From positions 242,715-306,714 of IMG/VR virus record IMGVR_UViG_3300027668_000008: DNA of 64,000 nucleotides; one strand, given 5' to 3'. Below, in pieces: positions 37,400-59,763 of this stretch (its first letter is position 1; each line of letters begins with the position of its first letter). Below the pieces are notes generated by a model. That model did not search any database. It was not told the origin of the DNA and worked only from the letters and a program-made list of their open reading frames with translations. A program made the translations under genes and the position numbers.

Positions 37400-37400
37400 T

Positions 37401-39033: not shown

Positions 39034-39034
39034 A

Positions 39035-43666: not shown

Positions 43667-43679
43667 CGGAATTCATAAC

Positions 43680-43802: not shown

Positions 43803-43809
43803 GAAATCA

Positions 43810-47116: not shown

Positions 47117-47814
47117 TGATTAACTATGTGTTTGATGTAGACGGCACACTTTCATACAGTAGAGAAGTTATGCCTCCTCATTTTAGGATCTGGTTTTTAA
47201 ACTGGATGAAAGGCAAGAATGTCTTTATTGTTACAGGTAGTGATAGACCTAAAACAATAGAACAGATTGGACACGAGATTGTAGACAACTGTGCTATGGT
47301 ATTCCAATGTGCTGGTAACAGTGTATGGCGTAATGGTATCGAAGTTGCTACTAGTAGTTTAAACGCTCCTGCAGATATGGACACATGGTTAGAAGCACAA
47401 GTAGACTTTAGTAAGTATCCACACAAGTACGGACACCACATTGAAAAGAGAGCAGGGCTAATAAACTTTAGTACTGTAGGACGTAATGCAGTAGGACCTG
47501 AACGTGACCATTACTTTAATTGGGATTGTAAAGAACAAGAACGTGTTAGTATATGTGAACACTTTAATAAAACTTTCCCAGGCTTTGAAGCAGAGCTAGG
47601 TGGGAACACAAGTATCGATATACATTTAAAAGGCAAGAACAAAGCACAGGTGTATGACATTATAGGATCGCCTATGGTGTTCTTTGGAGACAGAATTCAT
47701 GTTAATGGTAACGATAAACCACTAGCGGATAAAATGATACACCCACAGGATAAGTGGCATCAAGTCGATGGACCTTATACAACAGAAGACATACTTAAAA
47801 AAGATTATTCCTAA
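47116..47814 (+). CDS. HAD IIB phosphomannomutase-like enzyme
   Basis: FDVDGTL, VTGSD, IEKRAGLINFS..GRNA, GG..SIDI...GKNK, FFGD....GND; probable GTG start at 47116. Confidence 0.8.
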   Translation: MINYVFDVDGTLSYSREVMPPHFRIWFLNWMKGKNVFIVTGSDRPKTIEQIGHEIVDNCAMVFQCAGNSVWRNGIEVATSSLNAPADMDTWLEAQVDFSKYPHKYGHHIEKRAGLINFSTVGRNAVGPERDHYFNWDCKEQERVSICEHFNKTFPGFEAELGGNTSIDIHLKGKNKAQVYDIIGSPMVFFGDRIHVNGNDKPLADKMIHPQDKWHQVDGPYTTEDILKKDYS

Positions 47815-49172
47815 TGGACTTTATTGGCGCGAACCCACATGAGATGAAAGCAAAACTGAATGCAGTAGGACCTGGATTCTGTTTAGCCAAGTGGACACAA
47901 CTTACACTTAACTTACAAAATGGAACTGCACACAGTTGCCACCACCCACCAGTACATCAAGTACCTGTAAACGAAATTAAACTAGACCCTAGTTCATTAC
48001 ATAACTCCATTTATAAAAAACAACAACGTAAAGAAATGCTCGAAGGTGGTAGACCTAAAGAGTGTGATTACTGTTGGAGAGTTGAAGATGCAGATCCAAA
48101 TGCGTTAAGTGACAGACATTTAAAGAGTGCATTTAGTTGGAGCAACAAACACTTTGATACAATTAAAAACAATGATTGGAGTACAAACTTTCAGCCTAGT
48201 TATGTAGAAGTAAGTTTTGGATATGCTTGTAATTTTAAATGTATGTATTGCAGTCCTGCTATTAGTAGTTCATGGATGAAAGAAGTAAAACAACATGGCG
48301 GCTTTGGAACATCGGACAATTACAATGATATTAAATGGACTGAACGTCAAGGCAGAATGCCTATACCAGAACGAGAACATAATCCATATGTAGAAGCATT
48401 TTGGGAATGGTGGCCCGACTTGTATCCAGCCTTACATACATTCCGTGTTACAGGTGGCGAGCCACTTATGAATAAGAACACATTCAAGATGATGGATTGG
48501 ATTATTAATACTGAAACACCAAACACAAATTTGTTGTTAGGTATTAACAGTAACTTCTGTGTAGAGGATAAACTGTTTGACAGATTTATAGATAGATCAA
48601 AGCAAGTATTAGCAAGTGGCAAAGTTCGTAAACTAGAAGTGTACACAAGTGCAGAAGCATTTGGTAACAAAGCAGAATACATTAGAACTGGATTAGATTA
48701 TAAAAAGTTTATGAAGAATGTAGACTTTGTTTTAAATGAATTTAAAGACGAGCCCAATTTTAGTATTACATTTATGTGTACTTACAATGCATTAAGTGTT
48801 ACAACATTCAAAGACTTCTTAATAGACTTAATTGAATTAAGAAAAACATACGGTAGAGATTGTATGTATATCGATATACCTTTTCTTAGGTATCCAGAGA
48901 TGATGGATGTTAAAGTGCTTGACGATAGTTTCGAAAAGTACATGACCGACACTGTAACATATATGGAACAAAATGAATCTGAAGGATTGATGCATAGTAG
49001 TGAAACAGATAAACTAAAGCGTATTATAGAATACTGGCGTAGTCAACGTACAGTAGATCACACTAATCATAGGAAGAACTTTAAAGTATACACTGCAGAA
49101 CTAGATACACGCAGAAATACAGTGTTCGCTGATGTTTTCCCCGAATATATGCAGTGGTTCGATGCAATTTAA
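47814..49172 (+). CDS. Radical SAM enzyme with N-terminal twitch-like auxiliary Fe-S domain
   Basis: CNFKCMYC, TGGEP; N-terminal FCLAKW...SC...CDYC. Confidence 0.85.
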   Translation: MDFIGANPHEMKAKLNAVGPGFCLAKWTQLTLNLQNGTAHSCHHPPVHQVPVNEIKLDPSSLHNSIYKKQQRKEMLEGGRPKECDYCWRVEDADPNALSDRHLKSAFSWSNKHFDTIKNNDWSTNFQPSYVEVSFGYACNFKCMYCSPAISSSWMKEVKQHGGFGTSDNYNDIKWTERQGRMPIPEREHNPYVEAFWEWWPDLYPALHTFRVTGGEPLMNKNTFKMMDWIINTETPNTNLLLGINSNFCVEDKLFDRFIDRSKQVLASGKVRKLEVYTSAEAFGNKAEYIRTGLDYKKFMKNVDFVLNEFKDEPNFSITFMCTYNALSVTTFKDFLIDLIELRKTYGRDCMYIDIPFLRYPEMMDVKVLDDSFEKYMTDTVTYMEQNESEGLMHSSETDKLKRIIEYWRSQRTVDHTNHRKNFKVYTAELDTRRNTVFADVFPEYMQWFDAI

Positions 49173-50379
49173 CACAATTTATATAAATAACATTAGTAAA
49201 GAAATAGATCAGAGTATTGTTGATGCAATATCAACTACAAGCCTGTTAGATCAATCTAACAACTCTGACACAATCCCAGACAGAGTACATTCTCTAATCA
49301 CAAACACTGGGACAAAAAATCCGTATTTTATATTAAATGGACCTTGTAAATGGTTCGCATCTTGGTCGGATACACGGATTAACTTCTCTCGTCATACAGA
49401 GGTATACTTCTTTTTATACGAAGTATTAACAGTATGGCAAAATCACTCCAGATATAATTGTCCAGTGGGTAGTATAGAAAAAGACTGTATAATCAATGAA
49501 TTCGAAATGATCGATACATGGTGCAAGAAGCACAACGTTAGTAAGTATAAAATATTTACAAATGAGTATCGCATGAAAGAACAATTACAGCAAACGAAAT
49601 ACGCCAACTGGGCAATATATCCTTTAGACACATTCTCATTAAGTTATAGTTCTCATAAAAAGCAACCTAGTCAAGGTGCTCCTGAGGAAATCAAACACAA
49701 ATTAAATTGCTTTACATACCGCTGGGATCAACATAGACATTCTGCAGTAGCAATTCTTCACGACATTATGCCTGAGGATAGTGTCATGACACACTTTCAC
49801 AATACAGATGATTGTGTATTAAAATATCCTTTAGACAACAGCAAGTACTTCGAATCTTATACTAGAGGTTGTAACGACCTTATGAACCATTTACCTTTAG
49901 TAGTTGATGAACCAATTGAAACAAAAGTAGTTAGTATGAGAGATTGGCTTAACCCAAGTACAGGAACAATAAATAATATAGGTACAGTTGATCCACTAGA
50001 AAACTTATACTGGAATTCATTTGCTAGTGTAGTGTGTGAAACAAACTATGAATATCCTTGGGGTCAGATTAGTGAGAAGACTATTAACCCAATGAAACAG
50101 GGATCGCCTGTACTACTGTTAGCAGGTCCACACAGTTTAGAACTATTGCAACAATGGGGACTGAAAACATTCCACGAATTTTGGGACGAAGGTTATGACA
50201 ATGAACTGGATCCTGTCAAACGTATGGATAAGGTATTTGATATCGTAACAGACATCAGTAACTTATCATACCATGAGTTAGAAGTAATAAAGAAACATAT
50301 GAAACCCTTACTTGTACACAACCGTAATTTAATACGAACAGGTGAGATGCGAAATAATATTATAAAGGCACTACAATGA
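49162..50379 (+). CDS. Hypothetical protein with glycosyltransferase-like C-terminus
   Basis: VVCET...ISEKT..P...P......L..L...G.KTF..FWDEGYD; start probably ATG 49162. Confidence 0.45.
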   Translation: MQFNTIYINNISKEIDQSIVDAISTTSLLDQSNNSDTIPDRVHSLITNTGTKNPYFILNGPCKWFASWSDTRINFSRHTEVYFFLYEVLTVWQNHSRYNCPVGSIEKDCIINEFEMIDTWCKKHNVSKYKIFTNEYRMKEQLQQTKYANWAIYPLDTFSLSYSSHKKQPSQGAPEEIKHKLNCFTYRWDQHRHSAVAILHDIMPEDSVMTHFHNTDDCVLKYPLDNSKYFESYTRGCNDLMNHLPLVVDEPIETKVVSMRDWLNPSTGTINNIGTVDPLENLYWNSFASVVCETNYEYPWGQISEKTINPMKQGSPVLLLAGPHSLELLQQWGLKTFHEFWDEGYDNELDPVKRMDKVFDIVTDISNLSYHELEVIKKHMKPLLVHNRNLIRTGEMRNNIIKALQ

Positions 50380-51518
50380 ATATAGGTTGGTTTGGATTAG
50401 GAAAACTTGGAATGATCAGTTCCGAGATGCTAGTTAGTAAAGGACATACAGTTACAGGGTATGACACAAAAGAACGCACTAGTGAGCTTGTACGAGTGTC
50501 TAAGACACCGGAAGAAGCAGTTGTAGGACAGGACTTTGTTTTTGTTGCAGTACAAACTCCACACGATAAAGACTATGGTGGAGAGAAGCCTATAACACAT
50601 TTACCAAACAAAGACTTTGGTTTAGATCCTGTTAAAGAATGCTTAAAAGAAATTAACAAATATGCAACAGAAGATACTATTGTTGTATTAATTAGTACAG
50701 TGTTACCTGGTACTACACGCAGAGAGTTTGCGAACTTGTTAGACAAAGCAAGATTAATTTATAACCCGTACTTAATTGCTATGGGTACAGTTGCATACGA
50801 TATGGTAAATCCAGATATGGTTATCGTAGGAGGCAACAGACCTAACGATACTGATGCACAAGCATTAGTAAACTTTTATAAAACAGTAATGGAGAATGAT
50901 CCACATTATAATATTGGAACATGGGAAGAAGCAGAAGCAACAAAGATATTTTATAACACCTTTATTAGTGCGAGGTTGAGTCTAGTTAATATGATTCAAG
51001 ACGTTGCCCAAAGTGTAGGTAATATGAATGTCGATGTTGTAACTAATAGTCTGAGTAACGCAGGACAACGTATAACCAGTGCCGCTTATATGAAAGCAGG
51101 CATGGGCGATGGCGGTCCTTGTCACCCTAGAGATAATATTGCATTAAGACATCTTGCAGAAAGATTGGATCTAGGTTACGACTTGTTTGACGCCATTGCT
51201 AAAAGTAGAGAAGTACAAGCCGAACGTATGGCAAAAGATATATTAAGGTATGGAAATGAAATTGCATTTACGAGCGATACATATAAGCCAGGAGTAGAAT
51301 ACACTGACGGATCCTATGCTCTACTAGTACAACATTATATTAAAAACATGGGTGGGACTATTACTAATGGACCAGCAAAGGTTCTAGTAATAACTCACCC
51401 TGTTGATACAATTGAGTTACCAAGACAAACAGAAATAGTATTTGATCCATGGAGACAGTTTATGACCATTGGACACCACGGAGTGAAAGTTATTCATTAT
51501 GGAAACACACGAGCTTAG
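50376..51518 (+). CDS. UDP-glucose/GDP-mannose dehydrogenase family protein
   Basis: GLGKLG, VAVQTP, STVLPGTT, YNP, K..YN, GDGGPCHPRD, DPW. Confidence 0.85.
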   Translation: MNIGWFGLGKLGMISSEMLVSKGHTVTGYDTKERTSELVRVSKTPEEAVVGQDFVFVAVQTPHDKDYGGEKPITHLPNKDFGLDPVKECLKEINKYATEDTIVVLISTVLPGTTRREFANLLDKARLIYNPYLIAMGTVAYDMVNPDMVIVGGNRPNDTDAQALVNFYKTVMENDPHYNIGTWEEAEATKIFYNTFISARLSLVNMIQDVAQSVGNMNVDVVTNSLSNAGQRITSAAYMKAGMGDGGPCHPRDNIALRHLAERLDLGYDLFDAIAKSREVQAERMAKDILRYGNEIAFTSDTYKPGVEYTDGSYALLVQHYIKNMGGTITNGPAKVLVITHPVDTIELPRQTEIVFDPWRQFMTIGHHGVKVIHYGNTRA

Positions 51519-52023
51519 TCCTCTAGAGTATCATACTATAGAACTTGATCCTGTTTGGGAGACAAGTGACTTCGATCAATTTGAATATAAACGAAATGAA
51601 TACGGAGACATGGAGCAACTAGCGAAATGGAAGACTGCTGGACATACACATAATAACTTTACTGGTATGATGTTTAATGATCAGTTAGCAATTCCACAAT
51701 GGGCAAAAGACATTGGTAAAATATTAGATTGGAAAGACTGCGGTTTTACATTCTACAAGATGACAACGGGCGACATACTGCCGCCACACGCAGACCATTA
51801 CAACAAGTATAAAGAACTTTTTGGTATTGAGTCTAGCGATGATGTGTTACGTTGTTTAGTATTCTTGGAAGACAAAAAACAAGGGCACATATTTGAAATA
51901 GACCAGTACAGTATGAACTGGCACAAAGGAGGTGCCGTACTATGGAGAGGAAGAGTTCCACATAGTGCAGGTAACATAGGTTATGAATCAAGATACACAT
52001 TACAAATTACAGGACATTATTAA
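51499..52023 (+). CDS. 2OG-Fe(II) oxygenase-like protein
   Basis: LPPHAD (HxD), PHSAGN and RYTLQITG. Confidence 0.7.
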   Translation: METHELSPLEYHTIELDPVWETSDFDQFEYKRNEYGDMEQLAKWKTAGHTHNNFTGMMFNDQLAIPQWAKDIGKILDWKDCGFTFYKMTTGDILPPHADHYNKYKELFGIESSDDVLRCLVFLEDKKQGHIFEIDQYSMNWHKGGAVLWRGRVPHSAGNIGYESRYTLQITGHY

Positions 52024-52681
52024 ACTCGACACACTAGAGTTGTTGCGTGAATATGGTGTTAGTTGGAATAGTCCATACGACATTATACTAGAATTTGAAA
52101 GACGTTTAGCAACGTTCACAGGATCACCGTATGTAGTAACAACAGACTGTTGCACTCATGCACTTGAGTTATGCATACGTTGGTACAGACAACGACATCC
52201 AAGTCGTGTTCCGTCTATTACTATACCGGATCAAACATACCTTAGTGTTCCAATGATGTTGCAAAAGGTTGGAGCATCATTTACTATATCTGATAAAGAA
52301 TGGATAGGTGAATACCAACTAGGACAGTTGCCTATATATGATAGTGCAAGACGATTACAACACAATATGTATGAAGAAGATACCTTTAAATGCTTGAGTT
52401 TCGGACACGGAAAACCGTTGACAATCGGCAAAGGAGGTGCTATAATATTAGATAATAGAGAAGCCTACGACTGGATGATTCGTGCTAGATACGATGGTAG
52501 AGACCTTAACGTGTCTCCCTGGGATAAAGAGCAATATGAAACAGTAGGTTACCATTACTATATGTCGCCAGAACAAGCGGCAGTTGGTATTGTAAAATTA
52601 GATGAGTACAAAGATACTGCACCAATAAAAGTAAAGTATCCGAGTATTACAAAATGTTTTAAGATGGGGAATAATACATGA
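51983..52681 (+). CDS. DegT/DnrJ/StrS PLP-dependent sugar aminotransferase (short form)
   Basis: FERRLATFTG...DCCTHALEL, TY.S, DSA, CLSFGHGKPL..GKGG. Confidence 0.8.
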   Translation: MNQDTHYKLQDIIKLDTLELLREYGVSWNSPYDIILEFERRLATFTGSPYVVTTDCCTHALELCIRWYRQRHPSRVPSITIPDQTYLSVPMMLQKVGASFTISDKEWIGEYQLGQLPIYDSARRLQHNMYEEDTFKCLSFGHGKPLTIGKGGAIILDNREAYDWMIRARYDGRDLNVSPWDKEQYETVGYHYYMSPEQAAVGIVKLDEYKDTAPIKVKYPSITKCFKMGNNT

Positions 52682-53682
52682 TTATAGAATCGCATAATGA
52701 ATGGGATCCATTAAAGAAGGTTGTACTAGGTGATGTGCATGGAGCAAGATTCCCAAAGTATGATGACGTATTTAATGAAGTTGCAAAACACAGTAAGTGG
52801 ACAGAGTCGGCACAGCCACTAGGACCAATTAATCAAGACGTACTAGACTTAACAGACCATGAACTCAGAGAGTTTGAAAATGTGTTAACAGAGTTAGGTG
52901 TCGAAGTGTTACGTCCGAGGCAGTTAGACTTTCAACAAACAGTACACGGTTATAGATACTTTGCAGATGGTATGTATAATTATTGCCCACGTGACATTAT
53001 ACTTGTTGTAGGTAATACAGTAATTGAAACTCCTGTATTGTTTCACAGTAGGTTTCACGAAACAGAAGCATATAGAGATATTAAAAACAAGGCTATGGCT
53101 TCAGGAGTTAAATGGATTAGTGCTCCAAGACACGCACTACCAGTACACGAAGTATTTGAGAATGGAAAACTTACAGAGAAGACTCCAATCTTTGATGCGG
53201 CTAACGTAATGCGTTTTGGTAATGACTTGTTGTACTTAAAAAGTCAAACAGGTAATGCCGCGGGTGCTCAATGGTTAAGTACAGTGCTTGGTTCAGAATA
53301 TACAGTTCACATATGGGAAGATGTTTATGCGTTTGCACACATTGATAGTACTATTGCGGCACTGAATGAATCGACATTATTAATTAACAAACAACGAGTT
53401 AAGCCTTCACAGTTACCAACGTTTTTGAAAAAGCACAAACGTATCTGGGTTGACAGTGTAGAGGACATGGAGTTTCATAAATATCCATATGCTAGTAACT
53501 GGATTGGAATGAATGTGTTAAGCATTGATCCTAAAACAGTTGTCGTCGATCCTAGACAAAGAAAATTAATTAAAAAGTTAGAGAAAGCAAAGTTCGAAGT
53601 AGTACCTGTACAACTTACACACAGTCGTACACTAGGCGGCGGACATCATTGCGTTACATTAGATTTGGAGAGGCGAGCATAA
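52678..53682 (+). CDS. Amidinotransferase (glycine/inosamine-phosphate amidinotransferase family)
   Basis: SHNEWDPLK.V, CPRD, FDAAN, TGN..G..W, HIDST, GGGHHCVTLDL; Asp-His-Cys triad present. Confidence 0.9.
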   Translation: MIIESHNEWDPLKKVVLGDVHGARFPKYDDVFNEVAKHSKWTESAQPLGPINQDVLDLTDHELREFENVLTELGVEVLRPRQLDFQQTVHGYRYFADGMYNYCPRDIILVVGNTVIETPVLFHSRFHETEAYRDIKNKAMASGVKWISAPRHALPVHEVFENGKLTEKTPIFDAANVMRFGNDLLYLKSQTGNAAGAQWLSTVLGSEYTVHIWEDVYAFAHIDSTIAALNESTLLINKQRVKPSQLPTFLKKHKRIWVDSVEDMEFHKYPYASNWIGMNVLSIDPKTVVVDPRQRKLIKKLEKAKFEVVPVQLTHSRTLGGGHHCVTLDLERRA

Positions 53683-55208
53683 TGTTAACACTTGGAGTAG
53701 CGGCTGGCTTCCATGATGCAGGATTGGCAGTTGTAGATGATGGTGAGATTGTTTTTGCTGGACACAGTGAACGTTACAGTAAACAAAAACACGACAAAGA
53801 TTTACATATCGACATTGTTAAAAAAGGTTTAAGTTATGGAACACCAGACGTTATAGGTTATTACGAAACACCTTGGCTTAAAAAGACAAGAGAATTATAT
53901 GCAGGACAAGGATTCTTTGGAGACCGAAGTAGTGCATGGACAACTAAAGGTGCTCTTAAGAATCAATTTACTTTTTTGAAAACAGGATTAGCGTCCGGAC
54001 AAGAAACAAAGTTGTTACCTAACACAAAAATTGAAACATACAGACACCACCACAGTCATGCGGCGGCAGGATTTCAAACAAGTCCATTCGATGATGCAAC
54101 AGTTGTTGTTATAGATGCTATAGGTGAATGGGAAACTATTACTATATGGCACGCCGAGTATGATAGTAATATGAAAGCAACGTATAAGAAGTTGTGGAGT
54201 CAAAAGTATCCACACAGTATTGGATTATATTACAGTGCTATGACACATCGACTAGGCTTACGTCCATTAGATGAAGAATATATTATGATGGGTATGGCTG
54301 GTTGGGGAGAACCTAAACACCACGACGAGATTTATGATGCACTACTGCACGATGACGCAACAGGCAGACTTGCACACAACTTACACATTGGTGTCGACGA
54401 AGACTTTCTTAAAGATGCAAATGAATATGACATAGCCGCAAGTGCTCAGTCAGTTGTAGAGAAAATGATCGACAACGTTATGGCAAGAGCAAGAGGATTT
54501 AATAAGAGTCGCAATCTAGTTTACATGGGCGGCGTTGCTCTTAACTGTTTATACAACCGTAACTTAGGTAAGTTCTTTGATGACATTTGGATTATGCCCA
54601 ACCCAGGAGACTGCGGAAGTGCATTAGGTGCCGCGGCATTGGCATACGGAGGCAAACTTCGTTGGGAGACTCCATTCTTAGGTACGCCTATTGTTGGTGC
54701 GTATCCAGTTGATGACCTTATTGATGAACTACAAACTAATAAGATTGTAGGAGTAGCAAGTGGTAAAGCAGAGTTTGGCCCACGTGCATTAGGTAACAGA
54801 AGTTTATTAGCAGATCCACGTGGTCCTGAGATTAAAGATAAAGTAAATGATATTAAACGTAGACAAAAGTTTAGACCATTTGCTCCGTTAATATTAGAAG
54901 AACACGTTAATGAATATTTTGAAATGCCAGAAAACTTACCTACTAGTCCTTATATGCAAGTAGTTGCAAAGTGTAAGAGACCAGAAGACTTTCCGGCAAT
55001 CATACACGTTGATGGAACTAGTCGTGTACAAACCGTAAGCAAAGACTTCCCAAGTGGTATTAGAGACCTTTTAGAAAGATGGTATGTACTTACAGGTTGT
55101 CCTATATTATTAAACACAAGTTTAAACATCAGAGGCGAGCCTATGGTAGACACTAGATTAGATGCAGACAGGTTCGAAGCAATGTACGGCGTTAAGGTGT
55201 GTAGTTAA
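53682..55208 (+). CDS. O-carbamoyltransferase (NodU/CmcH/TobZ family)
   Basis: HDAG, ERY, HHHSHAA, DAIGE, GGVALN, EFGPRALGNRS, FRPFAP, LNTSLN; start ATG 53682. Confidence 0.92.
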   Translation: MLTLGVAAGFHDAGLAVVDDGEIVFAGHSERYSKQKHDKDLHIDIVKKGLSYGTPDVIGYYETPWLKKTRELYAGQGFFGDRSSAWTTKGALKNQFTFLKTGLASGQETKLLPNTKIETYRHHHSHAAAGFQTSPFDDATVVVIDAIGEWETITIWHAEYDSNMKATYKKLWSQKYPHSIGLYYSAMTHRLGLRPLDEEYIMMGMAGWGEPKHHDEIYDALLHDDATGRLAHNLHIGVDEDFLKDANEYDIAASAQSVVEKMIDNVMARARGFNKSRNLVYMGGVALNCLYNRNLGKFFDDIWIMPNPGDCGSALGAAALAYGGKLRWETPFLGTPIVGAYPVDDLIDELQTNKIVGVASGKAEFGPRALGNRSLLADPRGPEIKDKVNDIKRRQKFRPFAPLILEEHVNEYFEMPENLPTSPYMQVVAKCKRPEDFPAIIHVDGTSRVQTVSKDFPSGIRDLLERWYVLTGCPILLNTSLNIRGEPMVDTRLDADRFEAMYGVKVCS

Positions 55209-55879
55209 TGTTTGATATTATTTTTATGAGTTATGAAGAACCTAATGCAGATAAGCATTGGGATTTAGTTAAGAAGAAGTTTCCGTGGGCAAGACGAAGC
55301 CACGGAGTAAAAGGATTACCAACTGCACACCAGGCGTGTGCAAAGATGGCTCGTACTGAAATGTATTATGTTGTCGAAGGTGACAATCATATTACAGAAG
55401 ACTTCGATCCAAGTTTTAAACCAGACAAGTACGGCAAGGATGCAGTATATGTATACCGAGCTCGTAACAGTGTTAATGACTTAGTTTATGGTTACAGTGG
55501 TATTAAATTATTCCCTACACAAAAGGTATTAGACGTTGATGTAGAAACAGTAGTAGACTTTACAACTGCTATTAGTACAAAGTTTGTACCTTACCCTGTT
55601 GTAGGAAGTATAGTACATTACGATACTGATCCTTTCAATACATGGAAGGCGGCATTTAGAGAGTGTACTAAACTAACAAGTAAGATTATACCTGGACAAA
55701 AGAACGACGAAGACGATGCCAGACTCAAGGTATGGACTACTGTTGGCAACGGACTATACGGTGACTACAGTACTGCTGGTGCAAGAGCAGGAGCAGAGTA
55801 TGGTAAGAACAATAACGATTACACAAACATTAATAATTGGGAATGGTTAAAGGAAAGATTTGAACAAAAAACAAATTAA
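55208..55879 (+). CDS. Glycosyltransferase-like protein, paralogue of 37401
   Basis: DIIFMSYEEPNA, GVKG...AH, VEGDN, YGYSGIKL, AFREC.KL. Confidence 0.6.
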   Translation: MFDIIFMSYEEPNADKHWDLVKKKFPWARRSHGVKGLPTAHQACAKMARTEMYYVVEGDNHITEDFDPSFKPDKYGKDAVYVYRARNSVNDLVYGYSGIKLFPTQKVLDVDVETVVDFTTAISTKFVPYPVVGSIVHYDTDPFNTWKAAFRECTKLTSKIIPGQKNDEDDARLKVWTTVGNGLYGDYSTAGARAGAEYGKNNNDYTNINNWEWLKERFEQKTN

Positions 55880-56567
55880 CTTTGTAGACGATAATGATTT
55901 ATTTGGTCGTATCGGTTTACTTACAGGCGATACATTATTCAACGACTTGCGTAAAGCGAGTGATAACTTAAACGCAGACTTTACCGATGCGTTAAGTTGG
56001 GGACAATTAAAAAGCAAACGTTGGTTAGTAGACGAGCTAGTTCGTACAGGTGAAGAATTAAGAACTGTATTTGTCTTAGGAGGATGGTACGGTACGTTAA
56101 GTGCTATGTTGTTTAATACTAATATGGTTATTCATTACATAAGAAGTTTTGATATAGACGAAGGATGTCAACCTATTGCTGATGCAGTTAATAATACCCA
56201 TGTACAAAACAACTGGAGATTCAAAGCAGTTATAGAAGATATGCATAATATAAACTATGACGCACACACTTGGAGTTGTTGGAGTACTAAAAATAATCGT
56301 TTAAGTTTTCCAACTACAGATAGACCCAATACAATTATCAATACCAGTTGTGAGCATATAGAAAACTTTAGTGAATGGTATGCAAAAATGCCTAAAGGTA
56401 AATTACTTGTATTGCAAAATAATAATTACAGTGAATTAGAAGAACACATTAATTGTGTTAACAGTGTAGAAGAGTTTGCTGAACAAACACCTATGAAGAA
56501 TGTTTTATTCTCAGGTGAACTAGACGTAGGCAAATACAAAAGGTATATGCGAATTGGAATTAGATAA
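55860..56567 (+). CDS. Class I SAM-dependent methyltransferase-like protein
   Basis: VFVLGGWYG motif I, SFDID motif II, INTSCEH. Confidence 0.65.
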   Translation: MNKKQINFVDDNDLFGRIGLLTGDTLFNDLRKASDNLNADFTDALSWGQLKSKRWLVDELVRTGEELRTVFVLGGWYGTLSAMLFNTNMVIHYIRSFDIDEGCQPIADAVNNTHVQNNWRFKAVIEDMHNINYDAHTWSCWSTKNNRLSFPTTDRPNTIINTSCEHIENFSEWYAKMPKGKLLVLQNNNYSELEEHINCVNSVEEFAEQTPMKNVLFSGELDVGKYKRYMRIGIR

Positions 56568-56775
56568 ATTATCTATTAGAGAACTACAGACAGAATCCGC
56601 TAGGGCTCTGGCTACTATGGATGCTACAAGTGTAAACATTCATCAGTTCAATAAACAAGCACATCATAATAGTTGGAACTGGTACAAAGCAGTTATCAAT
56701 TGGTATGTAGAACAATACGGCGACTTGCCTAGCAAGGTTGGCCCGGGTATGAAAGTCGAACTTAAATGTCAATAA
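56554..56775 (+). CDS. Hypothetical protein
   Basis: Overlaps both neighbours; TTG start. Confidence 0.5.
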   Translation: MELDKLSIRELQTESARALATMDATSVNIHQFNKQAHHNSWNWYKAVINWYVEQYGDLPSKVGPGMKVELKCQ

Positions 56776-56993
56776 AAATAATAAAATATGCTAGTGCCTG
56801 TTTTATTTTATTAGCAATGGTATTTCATGTTGCAGGTATTACACCTTGGAACAGTATACTACAAATGATAGGAGCAAGTGGTTGGATATATGTAGGCTAC
56901 AAATGGAAAGAGAAGGCTCTTATACTTAACTTCCTTCCACAATTTTTTATAATTATTCCAATGTTAATTTGGATATACTGGATAGCACAATGA
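56766..56993 (+). CDS. Small membrane protein
   Basis: Three hydrophobic segments; W.YVG..W pattern resembling 38785. Confidence 0.6.
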   Translation: MSIKIIKYASACFILLAMVFHVAGITPWNSILQMIGASGWIYVGYKWKEKALILNFLPQFFIIIPMLIWIYWIAQ

Positions 56994-57736
56994 AGATAAC
57001 AATAGCAGGATTTGGATATGTAGGTAAAGCAGTTGATATGTTCTTAAAACAATATCATACAACTCATGTAGTAGACCCAGCATTTAGATTAGATAAGTTG
57101 ACAGACATTAAACCAGATGCTATAATAATATGTGTAAGTACACCCCAAGGTGAAGATGGTAGTTGTGATGTTAGTAACGTATTAGATGTTTTAAATGACG
57201 TAAACAAACACACTCCTGTTTTAATTAAGAGTACAATTAGTCACGAAGGGTGGCTAACAATTAAAGAAGCACACCCGGACAAACAGATATGTTTTAGTCC
57301 AGAGTTTTTAAGAGCCAAGACTGCAAATCAAGACTTCGCAGGCATGGACATAATGTATCTAAGTAACGAACACTCTGTGTTCTGGTGTAACTTATTTTAT
57401 GCAATAAGACCTGACTTAACTTTTAAAGTTGGAACAGTAGAAGAATTAATAATTACAAAGTATATGCGTAATAGTTTCCTAGCAACTAAGGTTAACTTCT
57501 TTAATCAAGCATTTGATTTATGCCAGGCACTAGGCATTAACTTTGAAACTGTCAGACAATTTGTAACTGACGATAGTCGTATTGGAAGTGGACACACCAA
57601 AGTAACTGAAGACAGAGGATTCGGTGGGCATTGTTTTCCTAAAGATACAAACGCAATAATCAAAACTGCACAATTCAAAGGAGTTGATTTAAGTATCATC
57701 AGAGAAGCAGTAGAGTACAACAATAGGATCAAGTAA
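56990..57736 (+). CDS. UDP-glucose 6-dehydrogenase family protein lacking the C-terminal domain
   Basis: GFGYVG, CVSTP, IKST, SPEFLR, KY.RN.FLA.KV.FFN, D.RIG, GFGGHCFPKD; start ATG 56990. Confidence 0.85.
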   Translation: MKITIAGFGYVGKAVDMFLKQYHTTHVVDPAFRLDKLTDIKPDAIIICVSTPQGEDGSCDVSNVLDVLNDVNKHTPVLIKSTISHEGWLTIKEAHPDKQICFSPEFLRAKTANQDFAGMDIMYLSNEHSVFWCNLFYAIRPDLTFKVGTVEELIITKYMRNSFLATKVNFFNQAFDLCQALGINFETVRQFVTDDSRIGSGHTKVTEDRGFGGHCFPKDTNAIIKTAQFKGVDLSIIREAVEYNNRIK

Positions 57737-57737
57737 T

Positions 57738-58064
57738 ATGCTAGTAAATATAAATGACATTGGTGGATTAGTTATTAAAGACAATGAAACTTATACACTA
57801 AAAGACAATACTACATTAAATAATTTAGTTGTTAGTTCAACTGACTTAAAGCCTTATAAAAGCACTAACGGACATAGCCATGCAGGACAAGAAGAAGTAT
57901 ATTACTTTGTAAAAGGTTCGGGCACTATGTTCTTAAACAATGTACCTCGCTTTGTAACTGCAGGTGACGTTGTATTAATTGAAGATGGAGTACATCACAG
58001 AGTAACTTGCGGTCCTGAAGGACTATACTTTGTTTGTGTGTTCGACGGAAAGCGAAACCACTAA
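57738..58064 (+). CDS. Cupin-fold protein (sugar isomerase-like)
   Basis: GHSHAGQEEVYYFVKGSG...GDVVLIEDGVHH. Confidence 0.8.
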   Translation: MLVNINDIGGLVIKDNETYTLKDNTTLNNLVVSSTDLKPYKSTNGHSHAGQEEVYYFVKGSGTMFLNNVPRFVTAGDVVLIEDGVHHRVTCGPEGLYFVCVFDGKRNH

Positions 58065-58228
58065 TGTTTAAATGGTACGACTACTTGAGCATTTACTGGC
58101 ACAGTAAATTATTACACACAGGAATAGTAATGTGGATGCATGGTAGTTGGTCAGGTTTGCCTATAGTGATTAGTACATGGTGGACTTGGAGAGTATACGA
58201 AGAAGTAAGAAGGAAATCACTATTATGA
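58064..58228 (+). CDS. Small Trp-rich hydrophobic protein
   Basis: TAATG and ATGA coupling on either side. Confidence 0.5.
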   Translation: MFKWYDYLSIYWHSKLLHTGIVMWMHGSWSGLPIVISTWWTWRVYEEVRRKSLL

Positions 58229-58668
58229 AAACAGGAATAACATTTAGTACATTTGATTTACTACACGCAGGTCATGTTGCAATGCTTCGTGATGCTAAAC
58301 AGCAATGCGATTATCTTATTGTAGGCTTACAAAGTGATCCAACACTTGATAGATTTACTAAAAACAAACCTACACAAACAATGTTTGAAAGATACCTACA
58401 ACTTAAATCAGTTAAATATATTGACGAAGTAATTCCGTATCAAACTGAACAAGACGTAGAAGACATTCTCGAAACATTAACACCCAACATACGAATTATT
58501 GGCGAAGAGTATAAAGAAATGGACTTCACTGGTAGAGATATTTGCAAACGGTTGGACATTATGTTATACTTTAATAAACGAGAACACAGGTTCAGTACAA
58601 CTGACTTGCGTGATAGAGTATGCACGGCACAACAACAACGGGAAGAATACCCTTTCGATATTAAATAG
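58225..58668 (+). CDS. Cytidylyltransferase, glycerol-3-phosphate cytidylyltransferase (TagD)-like
   Basis: FDLLHAGH (HxGH), ER, R.HRFSTT; start ATG 58225. Confidence 0.85.
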   Translation: MKTGITFSTFDLLHAGHVAMLRDAKQQCDYLIVGLQSDPTLDRFTKNKPTQTMFERYLQLKSVKYIDEVIPYQTEQDVEDILETLTPNIRIIGEEYKEMDFTGRDICKRLDIMLYFNKREHRFSTTDLRDRVCTAQQQREEYPFDIK

Positions 58669-58677
58669 GAAACATAA

Positions 58678-59763
58678 GTGTATAAGATAACAGACATAGA
58701 CACAGTGCATTTAGAGATTACGCAGAAGTGTCAAGCGGCTTGTCCTATGTGTGACCGTAACATGAACGGAGAAGGCATTAACCCTCATATTAATTTAGAT
58801 GAGTTAACACTAGAAGATGTTAAAAAGATATTTACTATTGATTTTGTTAAGCAACTAAAGTCAATGTTTATGTGTGGCAACTTAGGTGATCCTATTGTTG
58901 CTACTGATACACTTGAAGTATTTAAATACTTTAGAGAACACAATCCAGACATTTGGTTAAGTATGAATACAAATGCAGGAGCACAAAAGGAACAATGGTG
59001 GCAGGAGTTAGCACAAGTGTTTGCTAATAAAGGTCATGTTATCTTTAGTGTGGACGGATTAAAAGACACAAACCATTTATACAGACAAGGTGTTAGTTGG
59101 AATATTGTTGAACGCAGTATGAGAAGTTTCATTAGTGCAGGCGGTAAAGCACGTTGGGACTTTTTAATATTCGAACATAACCAACATCAAGTAGACGAAG
59201 CACGGGCCATGGCAGAGAGTATTGGCTTTGAAAGTTTTGTTAGTAAGAAGACAGGACGATTTGTAACTGCAACTACTGAAAAGAAAGACGAACACCAAGC
59301 AAAGAATCGAAAGGGCGAAGACAGTACAGCACTAAAGAAACCTGACGATAAATATTTGAACAACGCATTAAAACAACAAGACGACTTAGTCAACAAACAC
59401 GGTAGTATGGATCAGTATTATGATACTGCAAAGATTATTTGTAAGGTTTCAAATAAGACTACCCGAAGTTTATATATTAGTGCCGAAGGGCTGGCACTTC
59501 CTTGTTGCTGGACTGCTGGACGTATGTACAAGTGGTGGCATAAAGATCCTAAAAAGGAAGAACCTATTTGGGACTTCATTGAACGTGCAGGTGGCAAAGA
59601 TAAAGTAGATGCCAGGCACGGGTTAAGCAAAGTGTTTGACACAGGTATATTCAACGACATCGCTAACAGTTGGAGTAAGCCAAGTTGCAAAGATGGGAAG
59701 TTAAAAGTTTGTGCTATGAAGTGCGGAGCAGAGTTCGATCCATTTGCGGAGCAGTTTAAGTAA
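58678..59763 (+). CDS. Radical SAM enzyme with C-terminal SPASM/twitch-like domain
   Basis: CQAACPMC, CGNLGDP, FSVDG; C-terminal C..PCC...C...C. Confidence 0.85.
   Translation: MYKITDIDTVHLEITQKCQAACPMCDRNMNGEGINPHINLDELTLEDVKKIFTIDFVKQLKSMFMCGNLGDPIVATDTLEVFKYFREHNPDIWLSMNTNAGAQKEQWWQELAQVFANKGHVIFSVDGLKDTNHLYRQGVSWNIVERSMRSFISAGGKARWDFLIFEHNQHQVDEARAMAESIGFESFVSKKTGRFVTATTEKKDEHQAKNRKGEDSTALKKPDDKYLNNALKQQDDLVNKHGSMDQYYDTAKIICKVSNKTTRSLYISAEGLALPCCWTAGRMYKWWHKDPKKEEPIWDFIERAGGKDKVDARHGLSKVFDTGIFNDIANSWSKPSCKDGKLKVCAMKCGAEFDPFAEQFK

What the first reader, a model, noticed from the sequence alone, without database searches (positions are those of the whole stretch)
50376..56567. Aminoglycoside-like cassette: dehydrogenase, 2OG oxygenase, DegT, amidinotransferase, carbamoyltransferase, GT, methyltransferase
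Seen: seven consecutive overlapping genes with intact catalytic motifs (PLP Lys in SFGHGK, Asp-His-Cys triad, HHHSH metal site). Known: oxidation, then DegT-family transamination, then amidino transfer is how streptidine guanidino groups are made (StsC/StrB1). TobZ/NodU enzymes O-carbamoylate sugars, and a phage carbamoyltransferase acting on 5-hydroxymethylcytosine has been described. Inference: the product is a guanidino- and carbamoyl-bearing (possibly methylated) sugar, a cationic decoration unusual for a phage. The DegT protein is only about 230 aa and lacks the usual C-terminal domain.
Basis: partly seen in the sequence, partly recalled or inferred. Interest (0 to 1): 0.78.

Follow-up and report, generated by a model that had tools for sequence, protein, structure and literature searches.

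The report
Phage guanidino-sugar tailoring gene island
A large marine phage carries a conserved, phage-specific gene set that most likely builds an unusual positively charged (guanidino, sometimes carbamoylated) sugar and attaches it to a still unknown target, a chemistry not yet shown for any virus.

Summary
The seven + strand ORFs at 50376-56567 are real and conserved. Four identities hold by sequence: NDP-sugar 6-dehydrogenase, short DegT (PLP lysine kept, C-terminal third absent), StrB1-type amidinotransferase (E 1e-82 to PDB 1bwd) and NodU/TobZ-type carbamoyltransferase. The 2OG oxygenase rests on an invariant HxD...H/Arg signature. The 'GT' and 'methyltransferase' have no sequence match and rest on fold only.

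The cassette is not a unit of its own. It is a slice of a nucleotide-sugar island of about 27 kb behind the tail-fibre genes of a roughly 350-kb marine jumbo myovirus. Of 82 viral loci, 53-60 share a phage-specific core: a GT-B glycosyltransferase (49132-50379, outside the finding), the dehydrogenase, the 2OG oxygenase and the amidinotransferase. None of 80 bacterial loci has it. Short DegT, carbamoyltransferase, GT-A-like protein and methyltransferase form an accessory set.

The genome has no cyclitol synthase, ThyA-type hydroxy(methyl)ase, TET/JBP or C5-methylase.

Best reading: a pathway making a guanidino-bearing, optionally carbamoylated or methylated, nucleotide sugar that phage glycosyltransferases put on a macromolecule. 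The acceptor is unresolved. Virion or host envelope is favoured; DNA is not excluded. It is not an aminoglycoside cluster.

The parts
43810..44532 (+). sugar-1-phosphate nucleotidylyltransferase (island member, outside the finding)
   Evidence: PF00483 E 2e-10; GlmU/RmlA-type NCBIfam hits
45816..46952 (+). divergent RuBisCO-like protein, first gene of the block syntenic in relatives
   Evidence: PF00016 E 4e-35; far below the form III cut-off; nearest PDB 2cwx E 4e-33; syntenic in L002-L011
47104..47814 (+). HAD-type phosphomannomutase-like protein
   Evidence: PF03332 E 9e-20
47814..49172 (+). twitch-domain radical SAM protein
   Evidence: NF033640 328 bits, cut-off 170
49132..50379 (+).
   Evidence: No Pfam match. 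AF2 model pLDDT 71, pTM 0.78. VIA Z 11.4 to the phage HY126 DNA glycosyltransferase, 10.5 TarM, 10.1 T4 BGT, 9.6 FUT9. Foldseek hits are all GT-B. Present in 58 of 82 amidinotransferase loci.
50376..51518 (+). NDP-sugar 6-dehydrogenase (UGDH/GMD family), core
   Evidence: PF03721 and PF00984 above cut-offs; phrog_9148 E 3e-82. The catalytic Cys region GGPCHPRD aligns with GGSCFQKD of UGDH. Present in 63 of 82 loci.
51499..52023 (+). small (174 aa) Fe(II)/2OG-oxygenase-like cupin, core
   Evidence: Weak PF05118 and PF05721 hits. H97, D99, H155 and R165 are invariant in 22 homologues. Present in 70 of 82 loci. Directly upstream of the amidinotransferase in 45 loci, with a 4-nt overlap in 28.
51983..52681 (+). 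short DegT-family PLP enzyme (accessory set)
   Evidence: PF01041 E 3e-18, profile positions up to 239 of 360 only. D120, S139, F140, K144, G151 and G152 are invariant. 39% identical to S-SCSM2R ORF305. Present in 27-28 of 82 loci.
52678..53682 (+). StrB1-type L-arginine amidinotransferase, core
   Evidence: PDB 1bwd E 1.4e-82 over residues 2-332; AGAT, SxtG and HsvA about 1e-45. Triad residues invariant. More than 576 viral contigs. Forms a clade with Actinomycetota StrB1.
53679..55208 (+). NodU/CmcH/TobZ-family O-carbamoyltransferase (accessory set)
   Evidence: PF02543 E 3e-42 and PF16861 E 9e-52; phrog_1601; NovN, GdmN and TobZ E 1e-36 to 3e-49. Present in 11 of 82 loci, all of which also have the short DegT.
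55208..55879 (+). GT-A / nucleotidyltransferase-fold protein with conserved acidic motif (accessory set)
   Evidence: No sequence family. At least 554 unannotated homologues. AF2 pLDDT 91. Foldseek hits are GT-A enzymes and sugar nucleotidyltransferases. VIA Z 10.8 to IspD over residues 1-138 and about 9.2 to GT2 synthases over all 223. D59 invariant.
55860..56567 (+). probable class I SAM methyltransferase (accessory set)
   Evidence: No sequence family. The Atlas model of a near relative matches class I methyltransferases at TM 0.6-0.77. Present in 17 of 82 loci, all with the short DegT.
56554..56993 (+). two small ORFs (73 aa; 75-aa DUF6552 membrane protein) conserved behind the cassette
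   Evidence: Syntenic in relatives; PF20189 E 3e-8
56969..57736 (+). second, C-terminally short NDP-sugar dehydrogenase
   Evidence: PF00984 E 3e-23 and PF03721; TIGR03026 E 2e-37
57738..58064 (+). small cupin
   Evidence: PF07883 E 2e-9
58177..58668 (+). RfaE-domain-II / TagD-like nucleotidylyltransferase
   Evidence: PF01467; TIGR02199 E 4e-21, TIGR01518 E 6e-18
58678..62338 (+). three radical SAM (twitch/SPASM) genes
   Evidence: PF04055 and PF13186; NF033640 423 bits for 60917-62338

Best explanation
The cassette is part of a phage-encoded nucleotide-sugar tailoring and glycosylation island.

Shown:
- The genes are intact, conserved and co-directional.
- Their families are an NDP-sugar 6-dehydrogenase, a small Fe/2OG-oxygenase-like cupin, a short DegT PLP enzyme, a StrB1-clade amidinotransferase, a TobZ/NodU O-carbamoyltransferase, a GT-A-like protein and a class I methyltransferase-like protein.
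- A GT-B glycosyltransferase lies directly upstream. Sugar-activating enzymes (a PMM-like mutase and two nucleotidylyltransferases), a second dehydrogenase and four radical SAM enzymes lie around the cassette.
- Dehydrogenase + 2OG oxygenase + amidinotransferase (+ GT-B) is a phage-specific, translationally coupled core. The DegT, carbamoyltransferase, GT-A-like protein and methyltransferase are an accessory set that travels with the DegT.

Inferred:
- A hexose phosphate is activated to an NDP-sugar and oxidised at C6 by the dehydrogenase.
- The 2OG oxygenase performs a further oxidation or hydroxylation of the sugar.
- An amino group, made by the short DegT where it is present or supplied by a host amino sugar where it is not, receives an amidino group from L-arginine through the Cys325 thio-uronium intermediate. 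The products are ornithine and a guanidino sugar.
- In this phage the sugar or glycan is further O-carbamoylated (carbamoyl phosphate + ATP) and methylated.
- The GT-B and GT-A-like enzymes transfer it to a macromolecule. The position behind the tail-fibre genes, and the apparent lack of the starting bases needed for DNA glycosylation, point to virion proteins or the infected cell's envelope glycan as acceptor. This step is unresolved.
For: - Family assignments.
- Catalytic residues conserved.
- Fold assignments: GT-B for 49132-50379, GT-A-like for 55208-55879, methyltransferase-like for 55860-56567.
- Synteny from the RuBisCO-like gene to the radical SAM genes in 10 related contigs.
- Co-occurrence in 82 viral loci: dehydrogenase + 2OG in 60, plus GT-B in 53. 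The 2OG gene is directly upstream of the amidinotransferase in 45 loci, with a 4-nt overlap in 28. All 11 carbamoyltransferase loci, all 17 methyltransferase loci and 14 of 15 GT-A-like loci also carry the short DegT.
- None of 80 bacterial amidinotransferase loci has these partners.
- The phage amidinotransferases form their own clade and group (96/93) with the Actinomycetota StrB1 clade rather than with the Dap/NRPS-context clade.
- Synechococcus phage S-SCSM2R carries short DegT + radical SAM + GTs + 2OG + amidinotransferase together.
- A short DegT sits in a plain glycan cluster of a Flavobacterium phage.
- The genome has no ThyA-family gene, TET/JBP or C5-methylase. A 99%-complete relative with the core has no ThyA-family gene.
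- Tail-fibre and baseplate genes lie directly upstream.
- Patchy matching contigs occur in four marine metatranscriptomes.
Against:
- The amidino acceptor is unknown. Relatives at 42-45% identity in Proteobacteria sit with SbnA/SbnB-like and NRPS-like genes and probably act on an amino acid, so homology alone does not prove a sugar acceptor.
- A UGDH-type enzyme gives a carboxylate, not a keto sugar, so the source of the amine is unexplained in the 55 loci without a DegT.
- The short DegT lacks the domain that normally helps bind the nucleotide sugar.
- The GT-A-like protein matches cytidylyltransferases as well as it matches GTs.
- The 2OG assignment rests on motif conservation and sub-threshold Pfam hits.
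- The best structural matches of the GT-B are phage DNA glycosyltransferases.
- The genome record is only 87% complete.
- The RNA evidence could be DNA carry-over.
Confidence: 0.5

Rival explanations
1. DNA hypermodification. The GT-B enzyme glycosylates a base in phage DNA with the sugar made by the dehydrogenase module. The amidino, carbamoyl and methyl groups decorate that DNA-bound sugar or base and protect the genome from nucleases.
For: - The best structural matches of 49132-50379 are phage DNA glycosyltransferases: the HY126 transferase from a phage with arabinosylated 5hoC DNA at Z 11.4, T4 beta-GT at 10.1 and T4 alpha-GT at 9.7 (PMC13326640).
- A member of the carbamoyltransferase family acts on 5hmC in DNA (PMC8670742).
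- 2OG oxygenases and PLP enzymes occur in known base-hypermodification pathways (own knowledge).
- The record is only 87% complete.
Against: - All known routes to a glycosylatable pyrimidine need a ThyA homologue, or a C5-methylase plus TET/JBP. None is found in the 307-kb record.
- ThyX, the ordinary dTMP route, is present.
- A 99%-complete 344-kb relative with the core lacks a ThyA-family gene. Only 3 of 10 large relatives have one.
- The Z margin over non-DNA GT-B enzymes (TarM 10.5, Gtf3 9.8, FUT9 9.6) is small.
- In PMC8670742 the DNA-type carbamoyltransferases co-occur with ThyA homologues, whereas those beside glycosyltransferases came from unmodified contigs.
Confidence: 0.17
2. Small-molecule product. 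The genes make a free guanidino metabolite: an aminoglycoside-like antibiotic, a guanidinoacetate/creatine-like compound or a guanidino amino acid. It would act on competitors or on host metabolism. The neighbouring sugar genes would then be a separate function.
For: - StrB1 homology.
- Amidinotransferase plus carbamoyltransferase recalls bluensidine (own knowledge).
- The S-SCSM2R authors call the homologues 'antibiotic synthesis genes' (PMC12801897).
- Ocean viral AMG surveys report creatine-pathway genes (PMC11360552).
- Bacterial relatives lie in NRPS-type clusters.
Against: - No myo-inositol-1-phosphate synthase or 2-deoxy-scyllo-inosose/DHQ synthase in the genome.
- No NRPS, SbnA or SbnB partners in any phage locus.
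- Tight operonic coupling to an NDP-sugar dehydrogenase and a glycosyltransferase fold in most loci.
- The match to StrB1 (E 1e-82) is far better than to glycine amidinotransferase (1e-45).
- No exporter or resistance gene was noticed, although this was not searched systematically.
Confidence: 0.15
3. Loose collection. The seven genes are unrelated auxiliary genes that merely sit together in a hypervariable island. The amidinotransferase, carbamoyltransferase and sugar enzymes do not share a substrate.
For: - The island lies in the hypervariable host-recognition region typical of T4-like marine phages (PMC7029224).
- Radical SAM genes are inserted or lost between relatives.
- The carbamoyltransferase is a common stand-alone phage gene (phrog_1601; hits in pelagiphages).
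Against: - The non-random co-occurrence and fixed order of dehydrogenase, 2OG oxygenase and amidinotransferase, with overlapping stop and start codons, across phage loci whose amidinotransferases are only about 40% identical to the window's.
- The accessory genes occur almost only where the short DegT is present.
Confidence: 0.12

Closest known systems
StrB1 (scyllo-inosamine-4-phosphate amidinotransferase) and the streptidine/bluensidine branch of streptomycin and bluensomycin biosynthesis
   Same: - Full-length homology, E 1e-82, the same Asp/His/Cys catalytic residues, and the same clade region in the tree.
- A DegT-family PLP enzyme and, as in bluensomycin (own knowledge), a NodU-type carbamoyltransferase lie beside it.
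   Different: - No cyclitol synthase.
- The DegT is a truncated form.
- The conserved partners are an NDP-sugar 6-dehydrogenase, a small 2OG oxygenase and a GT-B enzyme, which the actinomycete clusters do not use for streptidine.
- None of the 80 bacterial loci has these partners.
Arn pathway of lipid A modification (Ugd, ArnA, ArnB, ArnC; own knowledge)
   Same: It begins with a UDP-glucose 6-dehydrogenase, passes through an oxidised intermediate to a DegT-family transamination, and ends with a cationic sugar placed on a macromolecule by a GT-A enzyme. ArnC is among the fold matches of 55208-55879 (Z 8.9).
   Different: - No ArnA-type SDR decarboxylase or formyltransferase was recognised among the island proteins scanned.
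- A 2OG oxygenase sits in its place.
- An amidinotransferase would turn the amine into a guanidine.
- This is resemblance of logic only, not homology of the whole pathway.
Phage DNA glycosylation and carbamoylation systems: T4 alpha/beta-GT, RB69/HY126 arabosyl-5hoC (PMC13326640), 5hmC carbamoyltransferase (PMC8670742)
   Same: - The compact GT-B fold is closest to these transferases.
- The carbamoyltransferase belongs to the same family.
- Phage-encoded sugar activation genes lie beside the transferase.
   Different: - The ThyA-homologue hydroxylase or hydroxymethylase that defines those systems is absent here and in a complete relative.
- None of those systems has an amidinotransferase or an NDP-sugar dehydrogenase (one search found neither term in the arabinosylation paper apart from a HAD misnomer).
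'Antibiotic synthesis genes' of Synechococcus phage S-SCSM2R (PMC12801897)
   Same: Homologues of the short DegT (39%), the 2OG oxygenase (26%) and the amidinotransferase (36%) lie clustered with a radical SAM gene and glycosyltransferases.
   Different: - S-SCSM2R lacks the dehydrogenase, the carbamoyltransferase and the two unnamed proteins in that cluster.
- Its amidinotransferase belongs to a separate phage clade.
- The paper gives annotation only, with no function test.
LPS-like / glycosyltransferase genes in the host-recognition cluster of pelagimyophages and cyanomyophages (PMC7029224)
   Same: The position behind the tail-fibre genes is the same. So is the presence of UDP-glucose 6-dehydrogenase, rfaE-like, radical SAM and glycosyltransferase genes. 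The authors propose modification of the host surface.
   Different: - That work does not mention an amidinotransferase (no 'arginine' hit).
- The present phage is a roughly 350-kb jumbo phage nearest to Rak2/Atu_ph07-type phages (36% baseplate wedge identity), not a pelagimyophage.

Membership tests
Amidinotransferase (pentein superfamily; StrB1/AGAT type) | Full-length sequence homology to characterised amidinotransferases | tested here: met
   1bwd E 1.4e-82 over residues 2-332; AGAT, SxtG and HsvA about 1e-45
Amidinotransferase (pentein superfamily; StrB1/AGAT type) | Catalytic Cys nucleophile with His and Asp residues | tested here: met
   D106, D173, H221, D223 and C325 invariant in the alignment. 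They fall in the CPRD, FDAAN, HIDST and HC stretches matched to StrB1.
Amidinotransferase (pentein superfamily; StrB1/AGAT type) | Arginine-dependent amidino transfer to inosamine phosphate or another amine | not testable with these tools
   Needs an enzyme assay
Aminoglycoside / aminocyclitol biosynthetic cluster | Cyclitol-forming enzyme (myo-inositol-1-phosphate synthase or 2-deoxy-scyllo-inosose synthase) | tested here: not met
   No PF01658 and no PF01761 match in the 307-kb record. The record is 87% complete.
Aminoglycoside / aminocyclitol biosynthetic cluster | Full-length StsC/BtrS-type DegT aminotransferase | tested here: not met
   Only a 232-aa form covering Pfam profile positions up to 239 of 360
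DegT/DnrJ/EryC1/StrS sugar aminotransferases | PLP-binding Lys in the SF...K motif, Asp for the pyridine N, Gly-rich loop | tested here: met
   K144, S139, F140, D120, G151 and G152 invariant in 17 sequences; PF01041 E 3e-18
DegT/DnrJ/EryC1/StrS sugar aminotransferases | Two-domain fold-type I architecture of about 360-400 aa | tested here: not met
   The family core is about 195 aa and ours is 232 aa. The C-terminal third is missing.
NodU/CmcH/TobZ O-carbamoyltransferases | Both Carbam_trans_N and Carbam_trans_C domains above the curated cut-offs | tested here: met
   146 and 176 bits against cut-offs of 24 and 27; NovN, GdmN and TobZ E 1e-36 to 3e-49
5hmC DNA carbamoyltransferase system (PMC8670742) | Co-occurring ThyA-family dCMP hydroxymethylase | tested here: not met
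   No PF00303 match in the genome; ThyX present instead
UDP-glucose/GDP-mannose dehydrogenase family | NAD-binding and central domains, catalytic Cys | tested here: met
   PF03721 at 65 bits and PF00984 at 58 bits. The Cys in GGPCHPRD aligns with the UGDH Cys.
UDP-glucose/GDP-mannose dehydrogenase family | Score above the NCBIfam subfamily cut-off and a recognisable C-terminal nucleotide-sugar-binding domain | tested here: inconclusive
   TIGR03026 scores 139 bits against a cut-off of 190. No PF03720 hit was listed.
Fe(II)/2-oxoglutarate oxygenases | HxD/E...H iron triad and a basic residue for the 2OG carboxylate | tested here: met
   H97, D99, H155 and R165 invariant in 22 homologues
Fe(II)/2-oxoglutarate oxygenases | Significant match to a curated family or solved structure | tested here: inconclusive
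   PF05118 18.3 bits (cut-off 22.6), PF05721 16.9 bits (cut-off 22). The profile against PDB gives AtsK at best, E 0.08.
GT-A glycosyltransferases (for 55208-55879) | GT-A Rossmann-like fold with a DxD-type motif | tested here: inconclusive
   The fold matches GT-A enzymes. IspD-type cytidylyltransferases score as high, Z 10.8. D59 is invariant, but the family's first Asp is Glu here.
GT-B glycosyltransferases (for 49132-50379) | Two Rossmann-like domains matching solved GT-B enzymes over the whole chain | tested here: met
   115 chains at Z 8 or more, all those listed being GT-B. Foldseek probability 1.00. Model pLDDT is only 71.
Class I SAM methyltransferases (for 55860-56567) | Rossmann-like methyltransferase fold and a Gly-rich SAM motif | tested here: inconclusive
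   Only the Atlas model of a near relative was compared, TM 0.6-0.77. There is no Pfam or PDB sequence hit. The sequence shows VLGGWYG followed by an acidic FDID.

The most novel reading that the evidence does not exclude
Marine jumbo phages share a phage-specific four-enzyme module: NDP-sugar dehydrogenase, small 2OG oxygenase, StrB1-clade amidinotransferase and a compact GT-B transferase. The module would make a guanidinylated sugar and install it on phage DNA or virion proteins. That would be the first guanidino-glycan or guanidino DNA hypermodification known in any virus. This phage would extend it by carbamoylation and methylation.
Probability: 0.3. Interest if true: 0.85.

Novelty: new variant of a known kind. 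Interest (0 to 1): 0.62.

Why it matters
Phage-encoded sugar islands are usually set aside as 'LPS-like' auxiliary genes. Here, one of the best-defined enzymes of antibiotic biosynthesis is part of a module with a fixed gene order. The amidinotransferase is found in more than 576 viral contigs, and about 7,000 protein clusters match it. The association with its partner genes is found in none of the 80 bacterial loci examined.

If the product is a guanidino sugar on virions, the host envelope or DNA, it would add a new cationic modification to phage biology. That would bear on host recognition, superinfection exclusion or evasion of nucleases. It would also provide new enzymes (a minimal DegT, a sugar-directed amidinotransferase) for glyco-engineering.

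The finding also corrects a published reading of the homologues as 'antibiotic synthesis genes'.

Tried and rejected
- **Sequence-family searches for the unnamed genes.** Pfam, PHROG, NCBIfam and PDB sequence searches for 55208-55879, 55860-56567 and 49132-50379 found nothing. Scanning all 30 members of the 49132-50379 family against Pfam gave no consistent family. I had thought the TEK-like motif pointed to a GT10 fucosyltransferase. That stays a lead only: FUT9 scores Z 9.6, below the phage DNA glycosyltransferases.
- **2OG profile against PDB.** The best match was AtsK at E 0.08.
- **Short-DegT profile against one full-length DegT (hhalign).** The alignment was weak but consistent in register.
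- **Complex prediction of a short-DegT dimer with PLP.** The job was counted but not folded. It gives no evidence either way.
- **T4 late promoter motif TATAAATA.** Two matches against 8.8 expected, so it gives no timing information. The general sigma-70 scan found fewer sites than in shuffles.
- **The look-up of encoding contigs on bacterial amidinotransferases.** It failed because the exact gene products were not on record. I clustered the neighbourhoods myself instead.
- **The neighbours c19 and c20 of the distant loci.** I considered them part of the module and rejected this. In this genome their homologues lie about 170 kb away from the amidinotransferase.
- **Cyanophage or pelagimyophage identity.** Rejected. 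There is no psbA, and the nearest baseplate wedge proteins are from Rak2/Atu_ph07-type jumbo phages.
- **A 710-aa dehydrogenase in L030/L031 as a fusion with the GT-B domain.** Rejected. It carries an unrelated insertion of about 350 aa.

Full report
**Observation**

The window is the last 64 kb of a 306,714-bp viral record. CheckV puts its completeness at 87%. The seven ORFs named in the finding are all present on the + strand with overlapping or abutting ends. The carbamoyltransferase ORF is listed from a TTG at 53649. The ATG at 53679 (MLTLGV...) is the likelier start and overlaps the preceding stop by 4 nt.

The same genes, in the same order and with the same lengths, recur in ten IMG/VR contigs at 50-100% protein identity. 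At least 14 marine DNA runs from several studies hold 66-100% of the sampled words of the stretch. Four metatranscriptome libraries hold short matching contigs scattered over all seven genes. DNA carry-over in those RNA libraries cannot be excluded.

**What each gene is**

- **50376-51518** is a member of the UDP-glucose/GDP-mannose dehydrogenase family. PF03721 and PF00984 score above their cut-offs, and phrog_9148 gives E 3e-82. Its GGPCHPRD segment aligns with the catalytic-Cys segment of solved UGDHs. It falls below the NCBIfam subfamily cut-off.
- **51499-52023** hits Asp_Arg_Hydrox and PhyH only below threshold. In 22 homologues H97, D99, H155 and R165 are invariant. This is the iron triad and 2OG-binding arginine of 2OG oxygenases.
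- **51983-52681** matches DegT (E 3e-18), but only up to profile position 239 of 360. It belongs to a family with a core of about 195 aa. In that family the PLP lysine (K144), the SF motif, D120 and the GG loop are invariant. Members occur in S-SCSM2R, in two huge uncultured phages and in a Flavobacterium phage, where the gene sits in an ordinary glycan cluster. The conservation argues that the short form is functional.
- **52678-53682** aligns end to end with Streptomyces StrB1 (1bwd, E 1.4e-82). The match is much better than to glycine amidinotransferase, SxtG or HsvA, which score about 1e-45. The catalytic Asp/His/Cys residues are invariant.
- **53679-55208** has both carbamoyltransferase domains and matches NovN, GdmN and TobZ. 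The HHHSH stretch aligns with the His motif of NovN.
- **55208-55879** has no sequence family, but at least 554 unannotated homologues exist. A confident model (pLDDT 91) has a GT-A-type nucleotide-binding fold. In the second-look alignment, IspD-type cytidylyltransferases (Z 10.8, N-terminal 138 residues) score as high as GT2 synthases (Z about 9.2, all 223 residues). 'Glycosyltransferase' is therefore plausible but not settled.
- **55860-56567** is supported as a class I methyltransferase only through the Atlas model of a near relative (TM 0.6-0.77).

**Surroundings**

The cassette is a slice of a long co-directional array. Baseplate and tail-fibre genes lie at 7638-34683, including a 4178-aa ORF. 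They are followed by:

- about ten ORFs of 190-310 aa with few matches. They include a paralogue of the GT-A-like protein (37401-38336). Two of them, and the 235-aa ORF at 44517-45224 further on, match DUF6071; the last also has a weak SGNH-hydrolase hit;
- a sugar-1-phosphate nucleotidylyltransferase (43810-44532);
- a divergent RuBisCO-like protein (45816-46952);
- a PMM-like mutase and a twitch radical SAM protein;
- a 415-aa protein at 49132-50379;
- the seven genes of the finding;
- two small ORFs, one of them a DUF6552 membrane protein;
- a second, short NDP-sugar dehydrogenase, a cupin and an RfaE-II/TagD-like nucleotidylyltransferase;
- three more radical SAM genes.

The 415-aa protein has no Pfam match. 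Its model (pLDDT 71, pTM 0.78) is a GT-B glycosyltransferase. Every listed match is GT-B. The best are the phage HY126 glycosyltransferase (Z 11.4), TarM (10.5), T4 beta-glucosyltransferase (10.1), Gtf3 (9.8), T4 alpha-glucosyltransferase (9.7) and FUT9 (9.6). One 788-aa uncultured-phage protein, named as carrying a UGDH N-terminal domain, matches this model. This hints at a fusion of the two functions. I could not inspect it further.

**Comparative genomics**

A profile search of IMG/VR found more than 576 viral stretches encoding a relative of the amidinotransferase. I clustered the ORFs of 82 loci. The counts are:

| Gene or combination | Loci (of 82) |
|---|---|
| 2OG oxygenase | 70 |
| Dehydrogenase | 63 |
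| GT-B family | 58 |
| Dehydrogenase + 2OG oxygenase | 60 |
| Dehydrogenase + 2OG oxygenase + GT-B | 53 |
| Radical SAM | 36 |
| Short DegT | 27-28 |
| Methyltransferase-like | 17 |
| GT-A-like | 15 |
| Carbamoyltransferase | 11 |

- The 2OG gene lies directly upstream of the amidinotransferase on the same strand in 45 loci. The two overlap by 4 nt in 28 of them.
- Every locus with the carbamoyltransferase or the methyltransferase-like gene, and 14 of 15 with the GT-A-like gene, also has the short DegT.
- About ten of the 82 loci are close relatives of the window. The carbamoyltransferase association therefore rests on that clade plus two distant loci (L055, L070).

The cassette thus joins two parts. 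One is a widespread core: GT-B, dehydrogenase, 2OG oxygenase and amidinotransferase. The other is an accessory tailoring set centred on the short DegT.

The carriers are large phages. By CheckV, relatives of 344 and 354 kb are 99% and 98% complete. The baseplate wedge of this phage is nearest to those of Rak2, Atu_ph07 and SCTP-2-type jumbo phages, at 36% identity. There is no psbA.

**Bacterial relatives**

Eighty bacterial loci hold amidinotransferases 39-45% identical to this one. None has the dehydrogenase, the 2OG oxygenase, the GT-B or any other gene of the island within 8 kb.

In most Proteobacteria and Acidobacteria the neighbours are a PALP enzyme, an ornithine-cyclodeaminase-like protein, a 1,400-aa adenylation-PCP protein and a phosphopantetheinyl transferase. 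The PALP/cyclodeaminase pair resembles SbnA/SbnB. This is an amino-acid/NRPS context.

In a maximum-likelihood tree:

- The phage enzymes with the dehydrogenase context form one clade (support 99/99).
- That clade groups (96/93) with a second phage clade that includes S-SCSM2R, and with the Actinomycetota, Bacillota and Chloroflexota clade that contains the Streptomyces StrB1 genes.
- The whole group stands apart from the NRPS-context clade.

So the StrB1 likeness is real. The wider family nevertheless accepts very different amines, and the acceptor cannot be read from homology alone.

**Tests of the DNA-modification reading**

The published 5hmC carbamoyltransferase co-occurs with ThyA homologues. 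Carbamoyltransferases next to glycosyltransferases came from unmodified contigs (PMC8670742). The arabinosyl-5-hydroxycytosine systems, in which the HY126 phage is studied, also start from a ThyA homologue (PMC13326640).

The present record has no ThyA-family gene, no TET/JBP and no C5 DNA methylase. It does have ThyX. Among ten large relatives with the core, three have a ThyA-family gene. The 99%-complete one has none. The DNA reading is therefore disfavoured. It is not excluded, because the record is incomplete and the GT-B fold is closest to DNA glycosyltransferases.

**Tests of the aminoglycoside reading**

The genome has no inositol-1-phosphate synthase and no DHQ/2-deoxy-scyllo-inosose synthase family gene. 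There is no full-length StsC-type aminotransferase. The cluster should not be filed as an aminoglycoside cluster. The same applies to the 'antibiotic synthesis genes' label given to the S-SCSM2R homologues (PMC12801897).

**Most likely mechanism**

Shown: the families, the conserved catalytic residues, the operon-like coupling and the phage-specific association.

Inferred:

1. The phage activates a hexose phosphate with the mutase and a nucleotidylyltransferase.
2. The dehydrogenase oxidises it at C6.
3. The 2OG oxygenase modifies the sugar further.
4. An amine is provided by the short DegT, or by a host amino sugar where the DegT is absent.
5. The amidinotransferase converts the amine to a guanidine at the expense of arginine.
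6. In this phage, carbamoyl and methyl groups are added.
7. The GT-B and GT-A-like enzymes transfer the product to a macromolecule.

The island lies directly behind the tail-fibre genes. The pelagimyophage literature reads similar islands as host-surface modification (PMC7029224). Together these make virion proteins or the envelope of the infected cell the favoured acceptors.

Weak points:

- A UGDH-type enzyme does not create the keto group a transaminase needs.
- The source of the amine is unexplained in the 55 loci without a DegT.
- The short DegT lacks the domain that usually helps hold the nucleotide sugar.

I put 0.5 on this reading, 0.17 on DNA hypermodification, 0.15 on a free small molecule and 0.12 on an unrelated collection of genes.

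**Novelty**

Phage sugar islands are known, and so is each enzyme family. The fixed association of a StrB1-clade amidinotransferase with an NDP-sugar dehydrogenase, a small 2OG oxygenase and a compact GT-B enzyme appears uncharacterised. It is widespread in marine jumbo phages and absent from the bacterial loci examined. The only mention I found is the annotation in the S-SCSM2R paper. I rate it a new variant of a known kind, with interest 0.62.

Noticed in passing
window 45816-46952 (+): A divergent RuBisCO-superfamily protein of 378 aa is encoded in a phage sugar island and is syntenic in all close relatives. PF00016 gives E 4e-35. It scores 152 bits against a 497-bit cut-off for form III. 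The nearest solved structure is Pyrococcus form III (2cwx, E 4e-33), followed by RuBisCO-like proteins. By eye the KPK and K-E-D-E active-site stretches are kept. It probably acts as an enolase/isomerase-type enzyme on a sugar phosphate.
   Followed up: partly
window 52418-52446 and 57098-57126 (+): Two perfect extended -10 sigma-70 promoters (TTGACA-N14-TGN-TATAAT) lie inside coding sequence. One is 232 nt upstream of the amidinotransferase start, inside the short DegT gene. The other is inside the second dehydrogenase gene. None occurred in 100 shuffles. An exact match is kept only in the identical contigs, not in relatives at 77-93% identity.
   Followed up: partly
G000:C1:94914-96152 (-), outside the window: A second, longer (412 aa) AGAT-like amidinotransferase keeps the Asp/His/Cys residues. 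S-SCSM2R also has a second 'glycine amidinotransferase', which its authors detected in the virion proteome.
   Followed up: partly
window 16804-29340 (+): A single 4178-aa ORF lies directly after the baseplate wedge gene. It is presumably a giant fibre or baseplate-associated protein.
   Followed up: no
window 35134-45224 (+): An array of about a dozen ORFs of 150-310 aa, most without any family. It includes a paralogue of the GT-A-like protein (37401-38336, HMM E 4e-43) and three DUF6071 proteins (40523-41395, 42872-43666, 44517-45224). The last of these has a weak GDSL/SGNH hydrolase hit. These may be glycan O-acyl esterases or transferases.
   Followed up: partly
window 47814-49172, 58678-59763, 59763-60920, 60917-62338 (+): Four radical SAM genes of the twitch/SPASM type lie in one sugar island. 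Copies are gained and lost between close relatives. Their substrates are unknown.
   Followed up: no
L098-L171 (bacterial loci), e.g. L141:4000-14000: In many Proteobacteria and Acidobacteria the StrB1-like amidinotransferase sits in a conserved cluster with a PALP enzyme, an ornithine-cyclodeaminase-like protein, a 1,400-aa adenylation-PCP-hexapeptide protein, a PPTase and an S41 peptidase. The PALP/cyclodeaminase pair resembles SbnA/SbnB. This suggests an uncharacterised guanidino-diaminopropionate-type product.
   Followed up: partly
L030:4570-6702 (-) and L031:3485-5617 (-): The dehydrogenase homologue is 710 aa long because of an insertion of about 350 aa between residues 197 and 550. This could be an intein or an inserted domain.
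   Followed up: no
G000:C1:110184-111008 (-) and 188633-189373 (-), outside the window: Two longer paralogues (274 and 246 aa) of the small 2OG oxygenase occur elsewhere in the genome (HMM E 1e-16 and 1e-13). They may correspond to the 'aspartyl/asparaginyl beta-hydroxylase' reported as core in pelagimyophages.
   Followed up: no
window 56766-56993 (+): A 75-aa membrane protein (DUF6552) with apparently three hydrophobic helices is conserved right behind the cassette. If the glycan is exported, this could be a small flippase-like component.
   Followed up: no
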